Positions 14,521-63,106 of a stretch of 64,000 nt of DNA are shown piece by piece. The DNA lies in the NCBI GenBank assembly GCA_976226885.1, contig OZ320314.1, forward strand, positions 66,836,001-66,900,000, read 5' to 3'. The notes below the pieces were generated by a model. That model was not told the origin of the DNA, ran no database searches, and was given only the letters and a program-made list of their open reading frames with translations. Made by a program: the position numbers and the translations under genes. The DNA is from Iphione sp. A-MEVVRFRX5 (taxonomy: Eukaryota). Position 1 is the first letter of the stretch, and every line of letters starts with the position of its first letter.

Positions 14521-14570
14521 GAGGGCGCGGGTTGGTGGCAAGCCGCCTCGCGTAGCCAAGGCCTCTAGGT

Positions 14571-14664
14571 ATGATGCCTGGCAACCTACGCACACACTGG
14601 ATTCTATTCATCATCTCCCTCGTCTCCTTCGTCACGGCCGCCACCTCCGAGACTCAGTCTGATG
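14571..14664 (+). CDS. Lar: LAR coding exon 1: signal peptide (MMPGNLRTHWILFIISLVSFVTAATSETQSD)
   Basis: ATG at 14571; basic n-region, hydrophobic core WILFIISLVSFV and small-residue cleavage site (VTA/A); 94 nt ending in consensus donor GATG|GTAAGT (phase 1), compatible with the Ig1 exon. Possible upstream acceptor tcttttcatgtctgtag at 14517. Confidence 0.85.
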
Positions 14665-17600
14665 GTAAGTGTCACCTTACTCAGCCTTCCCATGTCATTG
14701 TAACTTAGTGTTTCACGTAACCTTTTTTCCTGCATGGAGGTCAAAGGTCATAACAAGACTAATCTTATAATACATATACACACATATATATACACCTCTA
14801 ACCAAATAGACTTAATATTCTGTAGGCGTTAACTGGATTGTTACAAACCTCTCTTGTATACTTCTTACAAGGCTATTCCTCGATGACAATGTCTTGCTGC
14901 CAGTGTACTAACCAGGTAGCATAGAATAACCATAACAACATGATTGTAAAGGTCATGGCCAGTTTGAATGTTTAAGCCAGTAACCTGTTGATTGAAAAGC
15001 AAGCCTTGGTGGATTAGGGAGTAAGTGATTTGTTATTCGCTGAACTTCAGTTGCATAAAGACTTTTATGTCGTGTCGCTCCTAGATATGACCAAGTGGTT
15101 CCTTTGTCAATATCTTTGTACCTTCTTTTCTGAGACTACATGTACTCTGCCAGATCCATCATAAATTGTTACTTTACCCTCATCGGCATCATGCAGAAAA
15201 CGTCAACTTCAAAATAAGCTTCGTGTGGCCACGATATGTCAATACGAACAGTGTCAGCATGACAAATCTTGCGCATGAGTCGTCGTGCATAATCAGTCAT
15301 GCGAAGAAAGATAGATTACTTGTACTTTCCTGCCGACAACTGTAGCTGTGGATTAAGAACGCTGATTGTCGTTGTGTTCAAAGCAATCTACCCCCGACGG
15401 TTTCGTAGAAATTGTTTCTCAAGATTACCGAAATTATCCTTTTCATTTTTAGTCTTTTAAGTAGTTGAAAATTAAGGAAAGAGACATGAAATAACGTCCC
15501 TTAAGTAATATGCCAATTAATATTGGGAGTGTTCGCGATTTTCGTATGATAACAACAATCCTAGCTGTAACGAAAATACATGTTCACCTACCCATGTTCT
15601 CGATGATCTCGTGCGGGTTCTGTTCAGGTTTTGTTGCCGGGTTGTGTGGCATGCGTTGCATTGCCCTATTGCAACGAACAAACCCGCCACTCCCCCCCCC
15701 CCCCAAGCCTCGTCCTCCTCCTCCTTCGCCCCTATCAACCACCGCCATCTGAAGGGAAAATGTACGATGAAAAGTACAGCAAGCAAAGCAATAACCGAGT
15801 TTTTGTAACTAATAAAGTTCATTTACAGTCCAAAGAATATGGCTTCATTAAAAAAAGAAAGCCGATTTTTCCCCCCAGTGACCACCACAAAGCAAATTGT
15901 GCCCATCAATATAAGGAAGTCAGCCATATTGTTCCACGTTCCGTCGCAACGAGAGTAAAAAGTAGCTCAACGACAGCGGTAATCACCCAAACGGGCGCGG
16001 TTTATTTCATATCGGAACCGGACAAATGAGCAAGATGGATGCGTTAAGCTCCCTAATGGTGTAGCAGGCAGAGAGCTGTCTCCGCCCAAGCTCTTAGTGT
16101 GTCATACATCAGGTCTTCGACGTAACGGGGCTCACGAGCCAACTCGCTGCCCAGCTTGTCAGTGGAAGAATATAGGGAAGAATGTAAAGAATCAGCCTGT
16201 CGACGGTCTCCTAAAAACAGCTGCTAGAAGCAAAAAGGCAGTAGAGAGGGAAGTTCTTTCATTGAGCTGTCAGGAGCATTTGTTCGATAACTTGGGTGGT
16301 GGTTTTTGGTAGTTGCGGCTTGTGTCCATCAGCAATCACGATGAGACGGGTGTAATGGCATCTCGAGCCGTTATGTTCAGAGATAACCTTGCCACCTCCA
16401 GCAATTAGAGGGTGGAAAGATTACCTGAGCGTCGCCTATCCCTGAAACAAAGTGAGAAGGTTGCCTCTCTGTCCTCATCTCTGATGACAGGCTGCAAGAC
16501 GAGTAGCTGGCCAGTTCTACTTCTGGATGAGTCACTCATTTCTTGGCGTGTGAACGGTTAAGTAACCCGCAGGTCTGTTACCAGAATTGACACATCTGCT
16601 ACCCTATCATAAAAGTCATTGTTTACGCAGCATGCATACCTGCGCTGTCACCGAGTTGGGAGTCTAACCCAACTGTTCTCACCTGTCACTAAACGGGAAA
16701 GTTACCCGCCCACACTCACCTGCCAGTATGCAAACGCTTACCTGACCATACACACCTGTCTATTAGTTTATTGTTTCTTTCCTTCTGTGAGGGATACCAT
16801 TTTTTTCCTGAGTTCCTTCTCTCTACAAAATGGGTGTATCAGTTACACGACTGTGTACAAACTGACTACGAGTTTATTTTTTCTTTCTTTCAGTGAGGAA
16901 GACCCCCCTATTCGCTGAGTTTTTGTTCTGTACTAAATGACTGTCTACAATATGTTCAAGTCATTCTTGCTTGTAAAAGTTGCCCGTATTAAAAAAAACT
17001 ATACTTCTCAGCGTAGCTTTTTAAATTTTTTGTTGTTGTTAACATACTGTCCTTTGCTGCAGGGTTTTGAAGGTAGAATCTTGTTGCCAGACTCAGAGCG
17101 AGCGGACCTCGAGAGGAGTGTTGAGGCGCCCTTGATACATTAGTCTGCCGCCGTCTGGCTCCCACTACCCTTGCGGCTTATGGCAGACAGCCCCGGCCCC
17201 CACCACCTCCCCGGTCAGTCCCGAAGGAGCTCTAGCCAAGCGCTACCCTCACAAGTTGCTCCCGTGTAGTAGGTCGGCTATTTCTGGCTACACGAAATCC
17301 AAACAGGCCTCAACCTAAACCCATATAATGTGCCTGGCGAGAGGCCGTGTTAGGGACAGGAAGATCCGATCTGTTCACTTGAAGCACCAGATGCCGCTTA
17401 GCTTTACTGTTTAGAGTACCGCTCATTTTGACACAGTTAGGGAGTTGTGCTACGTCTACTTGCATGTCGTATTTTTCCAACTCATGGAAATAATATAGGG
17501 GAAACAGTTTCAGCAGTCAAACCCTTAATACTAGCCTTATGACCGTGTTTCCATGAACGTGTGGTACATGTACATGCATGTAGAAAAGTACGGTATTATG

Positions 17601-34200: not shown

Positions 34201-35571
34201 GGAGCAGAGAGAGCTATTTAGACAGAGAATACTATTTATGTGTTTGTGACTGTAATATACTGAGCATAGAAAGAAGCGAAATTGGAAACGTAAAAAGTCA
34301 AATTAGACTGTCCCGTATTTCAGCGCCGGCGCAAATTATGGTCGTTCGGTTACCGTCGTGCATTCCAATGTCAGTATGCAAGAAACGAGTAGGGCGCGCA
34401 AGTTTACAATCGTATAAAGATAAAAGGGTGCCGCTAACTTTCATCAAGTTGTAGTACATTGTACAGTTACATATCAATTAACAGTAAGTCGATAAATAGG
34501 CACGTGGAATAAGTCGCTCAGCGGCAGCTCCAACGTTTGATCTGTTGTTGTTAAGAGGCAGCTCGTTGGTTGGGCCGTGGTAACTCTCCATTACGACCAC
34601 AACAGTTGGGACCCTATGAATACATCTACATACAAAGGAGCCCGAGCTTTTGTTTACTGTCGTGAAAATGGTTTACAGCTAATGTAGAACTCGCATATAC
34701 AGAAGCCGGTTGCGTAGTGATCTAAGCTGTGTACGTTGAGCGGCCACGCCTGTTTCCACACAGCGCTTAGTGCTATGGCTCGATGGTGAGTAGTCTAGTA
34801 CCAGTGTAGTACTAGTGCTACTACAAAGACTGTCGTCGGCTCCAGATGGAGCGTTTCGATGGTAGATTATCGATCAGTTGGACTGTTGTGATTAGAAGCC
34901 GCCATGTTGAATGTTCACTCTGACAGAGAGACTTCAGTTGTCGGCACACCTCGGCTGCTCGCCAGCGGGCGTTGAAACATGGAAACTACATTACTGACTC
35001 CTAGCGGCGGGCACCGAAGCTTTGCCCCCCGGAAAAGTGGTCGGCAAAGCTTCAAACAAAGCAACATTGGTGCATTTCCTGTCTACTGACCGGCTCTATG
35101 GGGCTTGTTTGCTTTCCCTTGATACATTTTCCGCCTAAAAAGCCCTATGACATTGCACTCTCCCCATTGAGTCCAATAGATCAGATATATACAGGTCCAT
35201 CATCTGCGCGGAAGACTATTCTTTTTACAGTTAAACATCACCTGTACAGATGTAAGGCATCTTTTCGCCATCCTCTCTTTCTCATTCTCCGCTCCAAGAA
35301 GGGTCTGTTGGGTGGGCGTTTGCCTTCCGTCATTTTACTAACATTTTCGTTTCTTTGTATTGCAGATCATTGACGTACTAAAAACTTGTAATCACTAACT
35401 TTCCAGAATCATTATCTAACCAAGTAATGCGCTGCTATTCCGCCTTTCAGATCGCCATACTAAAATAATTGCCCCCCCCCTACTCTCCCCTCCTCACACT
35501 TCTAATTGGTCCGCAGACTTTGAACTAACCAGGGCCGTCGCCTGTCTTTCTCTTTTTTCCCCACCTTTTAG

Positions 35572-35718
35572 CTGCTCCGGACCCTAACCCTAATCCGGAG
35601 CCCAACCCGGATCCCGACCCCAATCCTGAGGCCATTCCGGCACCAGGGTCGGGGACCGGGTTAGGGGGGCCAGGTTCGACCAACTTCACCCACTTCCGCT
35701 ACATCCAGTACCTCACGC
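35572..35718 (+). CDS. Lar: Candidate additional or alternative LAR exon encoding an (X-Pro)n ladder plus Gly-rich linker (AAPDPNPNPEPNPDPDPNPEAIPAPGSGTGLGGPGSTNFTHFRYIQYLT)
   Basis: Branch point ACTAAC (35524-35529), long polypyrimidine tract ctttctcttttttccccacctttTAG, 147 nt (49 codons), phase 1-1, no stop, donor C|GTAAGT at 35719. Pro codons vary synonymously (cct/ccg/ccc/cca). Confidence 0.75.
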
Positions 35719-37043
35719 GTAAGTAGTCCGGTGGGTGGCGGGCGTGCGCCAGTGCCGCCAGCCAACCCCGCCCTTCACAGCCCCGCGGACCGTTCCACAA
35801 GAAGAACAAAATCCCAACTACCCCCACACACCTGAAAAAAATACCTCTTCATAGTAATACAATTGTTTTTGGCACATAAGTCATTTGGATCAGTTATGGC
35901 CCTTTTTCATACCAGGAGATCCTCTTGCTATCTGTTTCCATTGACAACAGGACGGCTATCTCATCCCCTCTGCAGGTGGCCCGGACTTCTTGGCGCCATC
36001 TTCTTGGCTTTTAAGGCGGGTTCGACTCGAGAACCCCATGTAGGTTAGTGAGGAGGACTTGTACCAGCCATAAGTCCAGCGAACCAATTTTGCTGCAGGT
36101 GATAAGACTCAAGAGTAGATAAAGCGCCGACGCCAGCAGTGTAATTAGAACCGTGGGCCGTGGTGATATAGCCTACATTTTCCTTGATACGATCGCCTTA
36201 TGTCTGCATTGTTTCGTTATTCACGTCAGGCAGTCTATTTGGTTTTTCCTTCTTTTGTTTTTGTCGTCATCAGTTGATAATAGTTCAATAGCGCCACAAT
36301 AGACATACCTCCGGTCCCGTTACTCAACTTGTCGGTGGTGTGCTTGAAGAGGACCAAAGGAAAGCAGCGTCAGGGCGCACACACCCCATTCCCGTTTTCC
36401 GTGCGCATCTTCCGGTCGCCGGAAGTGTACACGCGATCGCACAGGGCGTCACAGACGGTGGTCAGGTACACCGGTGTAGGAGTGCTTTGAACTTGACTGG
36501 CTCCTCCAGTGCTGCAGTGTCCGCGTAAGCATCAAAGAGGCTCCGTGGTGGCAGTGCAATTCGCTCTGTACACCTCCAAGTTCATACGTAGTACATGTTT
36601 AGAATGCGGGGTCTGTATCGATCGTAATAGTTGGCAATGTCAGCGGCTTTTGTAATAGCTCCTTTTAATCGACCCCACTAGTTTTGGGTCCTCCTTCTCA
36701 CTCACTCGATCGTTATGCATGATCACAGCCATTGATTTTTCGGTTAGTAGTTAGCACCAAAGGCCTTGTTGGAGGGTATTGGCTGTACATGGATTACGAG
36801 GCGTTATGGTTGTTGGACGCATAGCAAGAGGATCTCTCAGTGGCGCGAGTGGCTGGCTAGGGACTGAGACACGCCCGCCCGACCGCACGCGTGTAAAGAC
36901 ACGCCATTTAATATTCAACCATCGCTTGTGACATCATTTGCCAGAGGGAAGGTTGGTGGGGGAGTGTGCTGGAAACGACTTGAACCGATAGTACACTCAC
37001 TGCGGAATCCCCAGCCTCAATAGTGTTATGTCTACACTCAATT

Positions 37044-37097
37044 TGTGTGTGTGTGTGTGTGTGTGTGCGTGCGTGCGTGTGTGTGCGGTGTGTGTGT
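37044..37097. repeat. (TG)n/(TGCG)n microsatellite
   Basis: Direct reading. Confidence 0.9.
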
Positions 37098-37152
37098 AGA
37101 CAAACATGTACCAAGGAAGAGGTCGATGTCTGCAGAGCTCCCTTCCGAATAA

Positions 37153-37792
37153 GGCCCGGTTTCCTTATGTGCGGCGACCTGCGTTGGTATGCGTGTGCGT
37201 TTCAGTGCGGGAAACGCATCGGTGGGGTGCAGGCCCGGTTTCCGGACGGCAACGCAGAGGGGTGTCCTTTGACAACCAGTGCGGGCCAGTGCGGACCAGT
37301 GCGTTTTATGACTGGAAAATACGAAAAAACGGCAAAATACGGCCGAAAAGCGGCAAATTACATGCAAATTGTCCCGAAAAACGCTCATTTCATGCAAATT
37401 CGGCCAAAAAACGGCAAATTACATGCAAATTCCGCCGAAAAACGGCTAATTTCATGCAAATCGGCCGAAAAACGGCAAAACTGTGCGGAAAAAAACGGGA
37501 AAAAAACGACATTGTGCGGAAATGTGCAGATATGTGCGGTATCATCAGTCAAAAGTCAGTCAAATTCAGTCAAAGTCAGTCAAAATGATACAAACACCAG
37601 TGCGTTGCTGTGCGTGTGCGTGGAATTTACGGGAACGGTCCGAAAACCAGCCACGCAGCTCTCCGCAGCTCTCCGCAGCCGCAGCTCTCCGCAGATAAGG
37701 AAATCCTCTCATTAAAATAACCGTGACAGTAAAACCGGTGCGTTTACCGCACCGCAACGCACGCATTGCTACGCACATAAGGAAACCGGGCC
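37153..37792. mobile_element. Non-autonomous PIF/Harbinger-type MITE (640 bp)
   Basis: Perfect 21-bp TIRs ggcccggtttccttatgtgcg / cgcacataaggaaaccgggcc with further subterminal inverted similarity; TAA target-site duplication (37150-37152 and 37793-37795); no transposase. Confidence 0.9.
37340..37488. repeat. 30-31-bp tandem array (about 5 units) inside the Harbinger MITE
   Basis: Unit cggccgaaaa(a/g)cggcaaattacatgcaaatt repeated with variation; it explains the 230-aa pseudo-ORF 37023-37715. Confidence 0.9.
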
Positions 37793-38436
37793 TAACGTGC
37801 CAACTTACTACTACACCTGTATGCATACGTATACACATGAGGGGGCACATAGGATTTTTGTATTGATCTTGCTCAATGCACCGCATGTATGAGGGAACCG
37901 TAGTCGCTGTATTAAACACTTTTAGTGATGAACGACATCACACCTGGCTAACCAGAGGCACCGTCCTCACTAACCCGCAGGTGTGTGCGTGCATGCGTGT
38001 GTGTGCATGCGTGTGTGTGTGTGTGAAAAGTGTTTTCGGCGGCGAGTGTAGATCACCACTGGAACATTGAAGTCCCCATTGACAAAACAAAATATAAACA
38101 TATTCTATGACAGCTGTCTGCTTTTCCTTATAATTGATCACAGAAGTCAAGTGACTTGTTTTCTGATATGCTATAGTTCATCATTAACACAAACTGTATA
38201 TGTACAGATCTATATGCAACTTGTCTAGAGTTGTTCTATAAGCTCTCCCCCACCTTTCTTCCCCAGTTGCCCATCTTAACAAAAATTATTTTAACATCTT
38301 TGGGAAAAGTTAGCGTGTATACTGTACCAGTTTAAGTTTCTATTCAGTAGTGCCGTGGCCCGGCTGGCTACAGGTTGACAGGGAGGCTTGCATTGAGGAA
38401 ACTGATTCTAACCATGTTGTTTTTGTGTCTTTTCAG

Positions 38437-38736
38437 ATGCACCACGAATCACTCTGGCCCCAAAGGACCAGAAGGTGTCGGAGAATGGCATCGTCAGCTT
38501 CTTCTGCAAAGCGTCCGGGAATCCAGCGCCAGACATCCACTGGCGCAAGGGTGGCAAGCGCGTGTCGGCCAACCGCCAGCGCTACATGCAGGTTGACATG
38601 CCGCATGGGTCCGTGCTGCGTATTGAGCCGGTGAAGGCAAGGAGAGATGATAATATCTTCGAGTGTGTTGCCGACAACGGGATTGGTGAGCCGGCCACCG
38701 CCTCAGCACGCCTCGACGTCTACGCTGAAGGACAGG
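38437..38736 (+). CDS. Lar: LAR exon, Ig-like domain 1
   Basis: Acceptor ttttgtgtcttttcag|, donor G|GTACGT, 300 nt, phase 1-1. Translation has I-set Ig hallmarks: FFCKASGNPAPDIHW, SVLRIEP, DDNIFECVADNGIG, ASARLDV. Confidence 0.96.
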
Positions 38737-62612: not shown

Positions 62613-62789
62613 CCATGCCGAGCGGCTACCCACGCATCACCGAGAGTCCAACACTGAAGGCCGTAGAGAAGGACCGGAATACAGTCATGTTATGCTCAGC
62701 GACAGCCAACCCCGACCCGACCATCATGTGGCTGAAGGACTTCATCCCCGTCGACCTCAGCGACCCCAGGCTGAAGCTCCTTCAGACTG
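62613..62789 (+). CDS. Lar: LAR exon, Ig-like domain 2 (N-terminal part)
   Basis: Acceptor tttttttccattgcag|, donor G|GTAAGT, 177 nt, phase 1-1; KAVEKDRNTVMLCSATANPDPTIMWLKDFIPVD is diagnostic of LAR Ig2. Confidence 0.97.
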
Positions 62790-62995: not shown

Positions 62996-63106
62996 GTTCC
63001 CTCCAAATCCGGCACAGTCAAGAGTCTGACGAGGGAAAATACGAATGTGTCGCCGAAAATAGCAATGGTGTTGCCTACTCGTATGGTGCCAACCTGTACG
63101 TCAGAG
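62996..63106 (+). CDS. Lar: LAR exon, Ig-like domain 2 (C-terminal part)
   Basis: Acceptor cttttctctctgcag|, donor G|GTACGT, 111 nt, phase 1-1; [37 protein letters not shown]. Confidence 0.97.

What the first reader, a model, noticed from the sequence alone, without database searches (positions are those of the whole stretch)
35572..35718. Hidden LAR exon encoding a dipeptidyl-peptidase-type X-Pro/X-Ala ladder ahead of the proteoglycan-binding Ig1
Seen: textbook branch point, polypyrimidine tract, AG and GTAAGT donor around 147 stop-free nt in phase 1-1; the ORF track misses it. It inserts A-AP-DP-NP-NP-EP-NP-DP-DP-NP-EA-IP-AP-GSGTGLGGPGSTNFTHFRYIQYLT between the signal peptide and Ig1. That is 12 consecutive X-Pro/X-Ala dipeptides (5 acidic), a Ser-Gly site and an N-F-T sequon. 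Known: such ladders are the stepwise DPP-IV-cleaved pro-regions of promelittin and other secreted peptides, and LAR Ig1 binds HS/CS glycosaminoglycans through a basic patch. I know of no such segment in vertebrate or fly LAR. Inference: a spliceable, protease-removable acidic pro-segment that could mask or tune ligand binding, i.e. a pro-receptor switch.
Basis: partly seen in the sequence, partly recalled or inferred. Interest (0 to 1): 0.85.

Follow-up and report, generated by a model that had tools for sequence, protein, structure and literature searches.

The report
Expanded N-terminal micro-exon of LAR
This is a real, conserved small exon that adds a short sugar-tagged, tyrosine-rich piece in front of the first ligand-binding domain of a worm's LAR receptor phosphatase; in this lineage it has also grown an acidic proline ladder, but the proposed protease-removable "pro-receptor" role rests on that young, lineage-specific part and is not supported.

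Summary
Window 35572-35718 (+) is a 147-nt, phase 1-1, stop-free segment with a strong acceptor and a GTAAGT donor, and it is the only such segment in the 23.8-kb first intron.

It is a genuine coding exon.
- A related genome (L001) aligns only at this exon and at Ig1 (both about 85.5%), with no indel and both splice sites kept.
- 18 of 22 in-frame differences fall on third codon positions; dN/dS is 0.065 at dS about 0.7.
- Five more distant genomes and 103 metagenome contigs carry a 42-66-nt version upstream of Ig1.
- One cDNA contig from a relative (P0262/L006) reads signal peptide, this exon, His, Ig1.
- Bivalve LAR genes have a 36-54-nt exon at the same place and phase.

The conserved core is an N-x-S/T sequon followed by [FY]RYIQYL and a junction His.

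The X-Pro ladder and Gly hinge occur only in the window and L001. They are under purifying selection there (dN/dS 0.054). So the DPP-IV "pro-receptor" reading concerns a young add-on and remains untested.

No RNA run was listed for this species, so cassette versus constitutive use is unknown.

The scan had not found this on other DNA.

The parts
14571..14664 (+). First coding exon of the LAR-type gene. It has an ATG after an in-frame TAG at 14553, a 31-codon signal peptide region ending ...TAATSETQSD, then one base (G) of a split codon. The donor is GTAAGT at 14665.
   Evidence: Read directly. The phase was computed from the coordinates.
35525..35571 (+). 3' splice-site region: CTAAC branch-point-like site (35525-35529), pyrimidine tract (19 of 20 nt) and AG at 35570-35571.
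   Evidence: The AG, the tract and a CTAAT at the same place are kept in L001.
35572..35718 (+). The exon: 147 nt, phase 1-1, 48 full codons from 35574.
   Evidence: The orthologous exon L001 5729-5875 has no indel and conserved splice sites, with 16 synonymous against 5 non-synonymous codon differences. dN/dS is 0.065.
35574..35645 (+). Lineage-specific ladder: 24 codons forming 12 X-Pro/X-Ala dipeptides, built of CCN-RAN hexamers.
   Evidence: Tandem Repeats Finder reports periods 18 and 12. The ladder is kept in L001 with 3 replacements and dN/dS 0.054. It is absent from L003, L004, L007-L009, the 103 metagenome contigs and P0262.
35646..35681 (+). Lineage-specific Gly-rich hinge (GSGTGLGGPGST) containing an SGTG motif.
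   Evidence: It is kept in L001 with one replacement (L to V) and absent from more distant orthologues.
35682..35718 (+). Conserved core of the micro-exon: sequon NFT, then HFRYIQYLT, then C, the first base of the junction His codon.
   Evidence: The same core, with a sequon, lies upstream of Ig1 in L001, L003, L004, L007, L008 and L009. It also occurs in 103 JGI contigs, 102 with a sequon and all with junction base C, and in cDNA-derived P0262.
35719..35726 (+). 5' splice site GTAAGTAG.
   Evidence: It is identical in L001, L003, L007 and L009; L004 has GTAAGTAA and L008 has GTAAGTCC.
38437..38736 (+). Ig1 exon, phase 1-1, with donor GTACGT at 38737.
   Evidence: There are 97 homologues with Pfam I-set and names such as Lar-like. 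dN/dS against L001 is 0.025.
62613..62789 (+). First Ig2 exon (context), phase 1-1.
62996..63106 (+). Second Ig2 exon (context), phase 1-1.

Best explanation
Window 35572-35718 is exon 2 of a LAR-type receptor tyrosine phosphatase gene of a lophotrochozoan animal. Other agents' notes call the animal an annelid.

The exon is an enlarged copy of an old micro-exon that sits between the signal-peptide exon and the Ig1 exon. Its conserved job is to put a short appendage directly in front of Ig1, the ligand- and glycosaminoglycan-binding domain. That appendage is an N-glycosylation sequon, the aromatic motif [FY]-R-Y-I-Q-Y-L, and a His made across the splice junction.

In the lineage of this window and L001, the variable 5' half of the exon grew by about 100 nt. 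The added sequence is a hexamer-repeat-encoded acidic X-Pro ladder plus a Gly-rich hinge, and selection now maintains it.

Shown:
- It is a conserved coding exon with kept splice sites and phase.
- It is included in mRNA of a relative.
- The ladder is lineage-specific but constrained.

Inferred:
- The core packs next to Ig1 and, with its glycan, changes the ligand-binding face, much as the meA and meB inserts do in vertebrate LAR-RPTPs.
- The ladder is an extended, protease-resistant acidic tail, not a dipeptidase substrate.

Whether the exon is a cassette or constitutive here is unknown.
For: - Related genome L001. It aligns with the window only at this exon (35566-35731, 85.5%) and at Ig1 (85.6%), plus two short non-coding blocks; the rest of the intron does not align. 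There is no indel, both splice sites are kept, and 18 of 22 in-frame differences are at third codon positions (binomial p = 4e-6). dS is 0.73 and dN 0.048, giving dN/dS 0.065; Ig1 has 0.025.
- More distant genomes. All have an exon of the same phase ending in ...[FY]RY[IT]QYLx + 1 nt | GTAAGT, 1.2-6.7 kb upstream of Ig1. Sizes are L003 51 nt, L009 51 nt, L004 57 nt, L007 60 nt and L008 66 nt.
- Metagenome scan. The degenerate pattern found 103 JGI contigs, against my own rough estimate of under 1 chance match. They give 24 distinct peptides and 51 distinct nucleotide versions. A sequon is present in 102 of 103 and the junction base is C in all 103, although the pattern did not constrain either. 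An Ig1 exon lies downstream on 22 contigs and starts AG|AT or AG|AC, so the junction codon is His either way.
- cDNA. Logan contig L006 begins with what I recognise, from my own knowledge, as the tail of a SMART template-switch oligo. It encodes signal peptide ...RNVTQYRYIQYLM-H-APKITVAP... (Ig1, Ig2).
- Bivalves. A 36-nt exon (Mytilus, in the public 'LAR' model P0250) and a 54-nt exon (Ylistrum) lie at the same position and phase, with an aromatic-Arg-aromatic motif.
- Structure. Two AlphaFold2 runs on P0262 give a short helix over TQYRYIQ. pLDDT is about 74-81 for the residues next to Ig1 but below 50-56 further out.
Against: - No RNA run was listed for this species, so inclusion here is inferred from conservation and from one relative's cDNA.
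- The functional part (packing on Ig1, effect on ligand binding) is inference. The AlphaFold models had no homologues of the micro-exon in their alignment, and confidence there is only low to moderate.
- Homology of the mollusc exons rests on position, phase, size and a weak motif match.
- The strong constraint on the ladder (dN/dS 0.054, no length change at dS about 1) shows it does something specific that 'acidic tail' does not explain.
Confidence: 0.8

Rival explanations
1. The ladder is a pro-segment removed two residues at a time by a DPP-IV-type dipeptidyl peptidase, which unmasks Ig1 (a pro-receptor switch).
For: - Twelve consecutive X-Pro/X-Ala dipeptides are present.
- L001 keeps twelve; its one change at a Pro position is Pro to Ala, which still fits the rule.
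- The ladder is under purifying selection, dN/dS 0.054.
- Stepwise DPP-IV cleavage of promelittin is a documented precedent (Kreil et al. 1980, listed in the references of PMC5778000).
Against: - The ladder is absent from every orthologue beyond L001, so it cannot be the exon's conserved function.
- It is not at the signal-peptidase N-terminus. ATSETQSD precedes it. Cleavage after VTA puts Pro out of register. Cleavage after TAA or ATS needs two or three steps past Ser/Thr (the -3/-1 rule applied by hand).
- A single Pro-to-Ala change has roughly a 1-in-6 chance among replacements at a CCN codon.
- From general knowledge, X-Pro repeats are usually protease-resistant rods.
Confidence: 0.07
2. 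In this lineage the added segment makes LAR a part-time proteoglycan. The SGTG in the hinge, with acidic residues upstream, would carry a glycosaminoglycan chain that could occupy the receptor's own Ig1 binding site in cis.
For: - SGTG at 35649-35660 follows an acidic stretch and is kept in L001.
- It fits the Ser-Gly-x-Gly attachment consensus (my own knowledge, not tested here).
Against: - No experimental or comparative test was possible.
- The motif is short and expected by chance in a Gly/Ser-rich hinge.
- It is absent from all other orthologues.
Confidence: 0.1
3. The exon is constitutive in this species, not a hidden or optional cassette. The ORF track missed it only because it has no start codon and is short.
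For: - Both splice sites are strong.
- The junction His, which exists only on inclusion, is conserved through both CAT and CAC codons.
- The one relative's cDNA includes the exon.
- No unusual conservation of the flanking 100 nt was seen: 34-39% ungapped identity.
Against: - The exon is phase 1-1 and a multiple of 3 in every species, so skipping is harmless.
- Mollusc models exist both with and without the segment: P0250, P0254 and P0270 with, P0252 and P0247 without.
- A conserved intronic block lies about 580 nt upstream.
Confidence: 0.5
4. It is a chance open frame in a hexamer or telomere-like repeat that merely looks like an exon.
For: - The ladder is a tandem hexamer array.
- It contains CCCTAACCCTAA at 35582-35593.
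Against: - There is a codon-position bias of substitutions, no indels at dS about 0.7, and conserved splice sites.
- More than 100 orthologous copies exist.
- A spliced cDNA from a relative includes the exon.
Confidence: 0.01

Closest known systems
Vertebrate LAR-RPTP mini-exons meA, meB, meC and meD (PTPRF/PTPRD/PTPRS)
   Same: Short in-frame exons in the ectodomain of the same receptor family. meA and meB reshape the Ig1-3 ligand-binding module (PMC8711739; PMC10883964). The ancestral form here is 36-66 nt, phase-symmetric and adjacent to Ig1.
   Different: - The position is new: N-terminal to Ig1. The known ones lie in Ig2, between Ig2 and Ig3, in FN5 and near D1.
- The motif is unrelated and carries a sequon.
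- Alternative use is not shown here.
- The window's copy is 147 nt, which is no longer 'micro'.
Mytilus edulis 'LAR' gene model (P0250, GCA_905397895.1) and other bivalve loci
   Same: An exon lies between the first coding exon and Ig1, in phase 1-1, with a GTAAGT donor and an aromatic-Arg-aromatic motif. Mytilus has FKEFRYLANLF and Ylistrum has DFYRFTNKIR with an NSS sequon. So a counterpart is already present in a public gene prediction.
   Different: - The motif is only loosely similar, so homology is inferred, not proven.
- There is no ladder.
- The junction base is A, not C.
- I found no paper describing it.
DPP-IV-processed pro-regions (promelittin type)
   Same: A run of X-Pro/X-Ala dipeptides with acidic X residues, downstream of a signal peptide.
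   Different: - It sits on a large receptor, not on a small secreted peptide.
- The ladder does not begin at the mature N-terminus.
- Cleavage is untested.
- The ladder is absent from orthologues outside the window/L001 lineage.
Acidic X-Pro repeat rods such as trypanosome EP procyclin and the TonB Glu-Pro/Lys-Pro spacer (from my own knowledge)
   Same: Tandem X-Pro dipeptides with acidic or polar X residues, encoded by short DNA repeats. Such segments are expected to be extended and protease-resistant.
   Different: The run here is only 12 dipeptides, at the N-terminal end of a receptor and not between two domains. No structural test was possible.

Membership tests
[quoted passage not shown] | N-terminal signal peptide followed by I-set Ig domains whose closest relatives are LAR/PTPRF-type proteins | tested here: met
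   The signal exon is at 14571-14664. Ig1 has 97 homologues with Pfam I-set and names such as Lar-like and LAR. The Ig2 exons are in the window.
[quoted passage not shown] | Fibronectin III repeats and two cytoplasmic PTP domains | not tested
   They lie beyond the 3' end of the window. No full-length orthologue could be retrieved because of the length filter of the homology search.
LAR-RPTP alternatively spliced mini-exons (meA-meD) | Short in-frame exon within the ectodomain | tested here: met
   All copies are phase 1-1 and a multiple of 3. Sizes are 36-66 nt in most species and 147 nt here.
LAR-RPTP alternatively spliced mini-exons (meA-meD) | Located at one of the four described sites (Ig2, Ig2-Ig3 linker, FN5, near D1) | tested here: not met
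   It lies between the signal peptide and Ig1. The described sites are taken from PMC8711739.
LAR-RPTP alternatively spliced mini-exons (meA-meD) | Regulated inclusion and skipping in mRNA | not testable with these tools
   No RNA run was listed. One relative's cDNA shows inclusion. Mollusc models exist with and without the segment.
DPP-IV-removed pro-region (promelittin type) | Uninterrupted series of X-Pro/X-Ala dipeptides | tested here: met
   Twelve in the window and twelve in L001.
DPP-IV-removed pro-region (promelittin type) | The series starts, in register, at the N-terminus left by signal peptidase | tested here: inconclusive
   ATSETQSD precedes the ladder. Of three plausible cleavage sites, one puts Pro out of register and two need two or three steps past Ser/Thr (the -3/-1 rule applied by hand; no signal-peptide predictor was available).
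DPP-IV-removed pro-region (promelittin type) | The pro-region is a conserved part of the precursor among orthologues | tested here: not met
   It is present only in the window and L001. It is absent from L003, L004, L007-L009, the 103 metagenome contigs and P0262.
DPP-IV-removed pro-region (promelittin type) | Demonstrated stepwise cleavage | not testable with these tools
   This needs N-terminomics or an in vitro digest.

The most novel reading that the evidence does not exclude
In this worm lineage the selectively maintained acidic X-Pro/X-Ala ladder would be a timed N-terminal 'fuse'. A dipeptidyl peptidase would trim it, or it would carry a glycosaminoglycan at SGTG. Either way it would mask the basic proteoglycan-binding face of Ig1 until removed, making LAR a pro-receptor. 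It would sit on top of a lophotrochozoan-wide fifth splice-insert site of LAR-RPTPs.
Probability: 0.07. Interest if true: 0.85.

Novelty: new variant of a known kind. Interest (0 to 1): 0.55.

Why it matters
LAR-family receptors use tiny exons in Ig2 and the Ig2-Ig3 linker as a code that selects synaptic ligands.

- **A further insert site.** This site lies directly in front of Ig1, the proteoglycan-binding domain. It carries a conserved motif ([FY]RY[IT]QYL, invariant except for one Thr-for-Ile in L008) and a conserved glycosylation sequon, and it is shared by many worm genomes and probably by bivalves. I found no description of it in the papers searched. It offers a concrete, testable handle on how ligand binding by invertebrate LAR is tuned.
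- **How a micro-exon grows.** In this lineage the exon tripled in size through a hexamer repeat that then came under strong purifying selection.
- **Gene annotation.** In these genomes a 42-147-nt exon without a start codon, inside a 24-kb intron, is easy to miss.

Tried and rejected
- **RNA evidence.** The look-up of sequencing runs on 35300-38800 listed no run, so read laying was never used and junctions in this species could not be checked.
- **Length-free search.** The search of protein representatives with the Ig1 exon was swamped by giant multi-Ig proteins and gave no full-length LAR. I therefore could not ask whether annotated full-length annelid LARs contain the exon.
- **First metagenome scan.** The pattern for THFRYIQYLT was too strict and found nothing. 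The relaxed core-plus-donor pattern worked.
- **Third homology search.** The search for homologous proteins on the N-terminal 45 residues of P0262 found only P0262 itself.
- **L002.** The contig ends 500 nt upstream of Ig1, so it was uninformative.
- **Alignment for folding.** MAFFT placed the short micro-exon peptides on Ig1's own QRYMQVDM stretch. The AlphaFold alignments therefore lacked micro-exon homologues, and the models are only weakly informative there.
- **Telomere-repeat origin of the ladder.** Considered, but CCCTAACCCTAA gave one hit against 0.33 expected, which is not significant.
- **Irrelevant call.** The bacterial promoter/terminator scan does not apply to an animal gene.
- **Literature.** Searches found no description of an N-terminal LAR exon.

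Full report
**1. The observation**

Window 35572-35718 follows ...ccccaccttttAG and precedes GTAAGTAG. The frame from 35574 is open for 48 codons. It reads a 24-residue X-Pro/X-Ala ladder, a Gly-rich hinge, NFT and HFRYIQYLT. The other two frames have stops.

The neighbouring exons fit.
- The first coding exon ends ...GATG|GTAAGT at 14664.
- Its ATG is at 14571, not 14573, and follows an in-frame TAG at 14553.
- The Ig1 exon starts at 38437 after ttttcAG and ends at 38736 before GTACGT.

All three exons are phase 1. Inclusion gives Ala (G+CT) on entry and His (C+AT) on exit, while skipping gives Asp (G+AT). Among the 14 GTRAGT sites of the 23.8-kb intron, this is the only phase-1-1, stop-free segment of at least 120 nt with a pyrimidine-rich acceptor.

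**2. Is it a real exon?**

No RNA run was listed for this DNA, so I used comparison with other genomes.

*The closest relative.* A search with the Ig1 exon returned exon-sized genomic ORFs from many related genomes. The closest, P0001 (97% at protein level), lies on a 4.5-Mb ENA contig, and I fetched 10 kb on each side of it as L001.
- BLASTN of window 28000-48800 against L001 aligned only four stretches.
- Two are the candidate exon (35566-35731, 85.5%) and the Ig1 exon (85.6%). The other two are short non-coding blocks.
- Inside the exon there is no indel, and the AG and GTAAGTAG are kept.
- Of 22 in-frame differences, 18 are at third codon positions (p = 4e-6). That is 16 synonymous against 5 replacement codons.
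- Nei-Gojobori values are dS 0.73 and dN 0.048, giving dN/dS 0.065. Ig1 gives dS 0.99 and dN/dS 0.025.
- The flanking 100 nt are 34-39% identical without gaps, which is unaligned background.

This is the signature of a coding exon under purifying selection.

*More distant genomes.* Five loci were fetched in the same way: L003, L004, L007, L008 and L009, with Ig1 65-76% identical to the window. Each has a small exon 1.2-6.7 kb upstream of its Ig1 exon, in the same phase and with a GTAAGT donor.

| Locus | Exon length | Peptide |
|---|---|---|
| L003 | 51 nt | DESGNLTHFRYIQYLT |
| L009 | 51 nt | GESGNLTNFRYIQYLT |
| L004 | 57 nt | NPNGNGTNSQFRYIQYLE |
| L007 | 60 nt | SATGTQNSTVHYRYIQYLL |
| L008 | 66 nt | TPQQDAPTNHTHQFRYTQYLT |

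*Metagenome contigs.* A degenerate DNA pattern for [FY]RYIQYL, four free bases and GTAAGT found 103 contigs in JGI metagenomes. By my own rough estimate the pattern has about 41 bits of information, so well under one chance match is expected.
- The contigs give 24 distinct peptides and 51 distinct nucleotide versions. Most are a 42-nt exon such as (G)RNFTHYRYIQYLT.
- An N-x-S/T sequon lies just upstream in 102 of 103.
- The free base before the donor is C in all 103.
- On 22 contigs an Ig1 exon follows 1-3 kb downstream and begins AG|AT or AG|AC. The junction codon is therefore His (CAT or CAC) in each case.

*Expression in a relative.* A profile search for N-terminal LAR fragments of 171-544 residues returned P0262, 221 aa, from a Logan assembly of run ERR9682774. 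It reads signal peptide ...EPDGRNVTQYRYIQYLM-H-APKITVAP..., then Ig1 and the first Ig2 exon. Its contig (L006) begins with tcaacgcagagtacatgggg. I recognise this, from my own knowledge, as the end of a SMART template-switch oligonucleotide, so the contig would be cDNA. Independently of that, the coding exons are contiguous on it with no introns. The exon is therefore spliced into mRNA exactly as predicted, including the junction His. After the first Ig2 exon the contig runs into intron sequence.

**3. How far back does it go?**

- In the Mytilus edulis genome, the public gene model named LAR (P0250) starts inside a 36-nt exon at L113 12408-12443: tttcAG|AT TTC AAG GAA TTC CGT TAC ... TTC A|GTAAGT. 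It lies 4.2 kb upstream of Ig1 and encodes (D)FKEFRYLANLF.
- In the scallop Ylistrum balloti, a 54-nt exon (L114 5501-5554) lies 4.8 kb upstream of Ig1. It has a strong pyrimidine tract and an A|GTAAGT donor, and encodes ENSSIRDDFYRFTNKIR.
- A Dreissena model reads ...DFDFFDYFDMFT-PAPRITNAPK. One Biomphalaria model reads ...NDSFEFRFPVVQS-PPKITMAPKD, while another Biomphalaria model and a Sinanodonta model go straight from signal peptide to Ig1.

Position, phase, size and an aromatic-Arg-aromatic motif agree with the worm exon. A common origin before the annelid-mollusc split is therefore likely but not proven. Krill, mite and fish N-termini in the same search have no such segment.

**4. What is conserved and what is new**

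The conserved unit is a sequon, one or two residues, [FY]RY[IT]QYL, one residue, and the junction His. The stretch before the sequon varies in length (0 to about 15 residues) and in composition.

The 24-residue ladder and the 12-residue Gly hinge occur only in the window and L001. The ladder is encoded by nine CCN-RAN hexamers, and Tandem Repeats Finder reports periods of 18 and 12. It is not drifting:
- Against L001 it keeps its exact length and 21 of 24 residues, with dS about 1.05 and dN/dS 0.054.
- The three replacements are Glu to Asp, Pro to Ala and Asp to Asn.

An AG at 35672-35673, in phase and kept in L001, marks where the ancestral-size exon would begin (45 nt). The 20 nt before it are now G-rich, with only 6 pyrimidines. 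The simplest history is a shift of the acceptor upstream together with hexamer expansion. This is inference.

**5. Mechanism**

*Shown.* The exon places a conserved sequon and an aromatic motif immediately before strand A of Ig1. Inclusion also changes the first residue of the Ig1 exon's contribution from Asp to His.

*Inferred.* The core docks beside Ig1 and, with its N-glycan, alters the ligand-binding surface. This is analogous to the way meA and meB change ligand selectivity in vertebrate LAR-RPTPs (PMC8711739; PMC10883964).

Two AlphaFold2 models of P0262, one with and one without the signal peptide, both give a short helix over TQYRYIQ. pLDDT is 74-81 for the residues adjoining Ig1 and below 50-56 further out. 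The alignments had no homologues for this segment, so this is weak support only.

For the lineage-specific ladder I favour an extended, acidic, protease-resistant tail. Its strict conservation says it has a specific role that I cannot name with confidence.

**6.

In favour:
- Twelve X-Pro/X-Ala dipeptides, kept as twelve in L001.
- Purifying selection on the ladder.
- A classical precedent in promelittin (Kreil et al. 1980, listed in the references of PMC5778000).

Against:
- The ladder is absent from every other orthologue, so it is not what the exon is for.
- It is preceded by ATSETQSD. Using the -3/-1 rule by hand, cleavage after VTA leaves Pro at odd positions, which is out of register. 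Cleavage after TAA or ATS leaves it in register only after two or three steps past Ser or Thr.
- Nothing can be said about actual cleavage.

I put this reading at about 7%. A second speculative reading, that SGTG carries a glycosaminoglycan chain, gets about 10%.

**7. Comparison with what is known, and novelty**

The gene is a LAR-type RPTP by its signal peptide and Ig1-Ig2 exons. The FN3 and PTP parts lie outside the window.

The exon works like the family's mini-exons but is not one of the four described. Its site, N-terminal to Ig1, is new relative to the literature I could search. A probable counterpart is already inside at least one public gene model (Mytilus), and the worm form is in a public cDNA assembly. 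The sequence has therefore been seen, but I found no description of it. I rate it a new variant of a known kind.

**8. Limits**

- The taxon is taken from other agents' notes on this genome (annelid). I did not test it directly. The closest named proteins are mollusc LARs at about 64%, and the closest unnamed ones are 70-97%.
- My recollection that many of the JGI contig series come from gutless marine worm samples is unverified.
- Cassette versus constitutive use in this species is open.

Noticed in passing
window 34868-34993 (L001 4980-5106): A non-coding block about 580 nt upstream of the exon is conserved with L001 (75.6% over 127 nt). It has islands such as GCTGTTGTGATTAGA and TGAAACATGGAAA and no codon periodicity. 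It may be an intronic splicing or enhancer element.
   Followed up: partly
window 39391-39450 (L001 10967-11025): A second conserved non-coding block (80% over 60 nt) lies about 650 nt downstream of the Ig1 exon.
   Followed up: partly
window 35663-35673: In-phase internal AGs at 35663-35664 and 35672-35673, kept in L001, would give 54- and 45-nt exons of the ancestral size without the ladder. The preceding 20 nt are G-rich, so use is doubtful but testable by RNA-seq.
   Followed up: partly
window 35649-35660: SGTG after an acidic stretch, kept in L001, fits the Ser-Gly-x-Gly glycosaminoglycan-attachment consensus (from my own knowledge).
   Followed up: no
window 35582-35593: CCCTAACCCTAA, two telomere-type hexamers, lies inside the ladder. 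In this frame (CCTAAC)n reads (Pro-Asn)n. There was one hit against 0.33 expected, which is not significant.
   Followed up: yes
window 35691-35717 vs 38577-38600: MAFFT repeatedly aligned the core FRYIQYLT with Ig1's own QRYMQVDM. This is a small resemblance that may be chance.
   Followed up: no
L009 16981-17019 (minus strand): A second motif-like stretch, RQQSEYRFIQYLE, lies on the opposite strand about 7 kb downstream of Ig1. It is unexplained.
   Followed up: no
L006 877-918: The relative's cDNA contig continues past the first Ig2 exon into intron-like sequence and a stop. This is a retained intron or unspliced RNA.
   Followed up: no
L114 5499-5503: The scallop micro-exon has a tandem CAGCAG acceptor. 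Both AGs are in phase, giving 54 or 51 nt.
   Followed up: no
   Followed up: no
L001 does not reach that far, so it was not evaluated.
   Followed up: no
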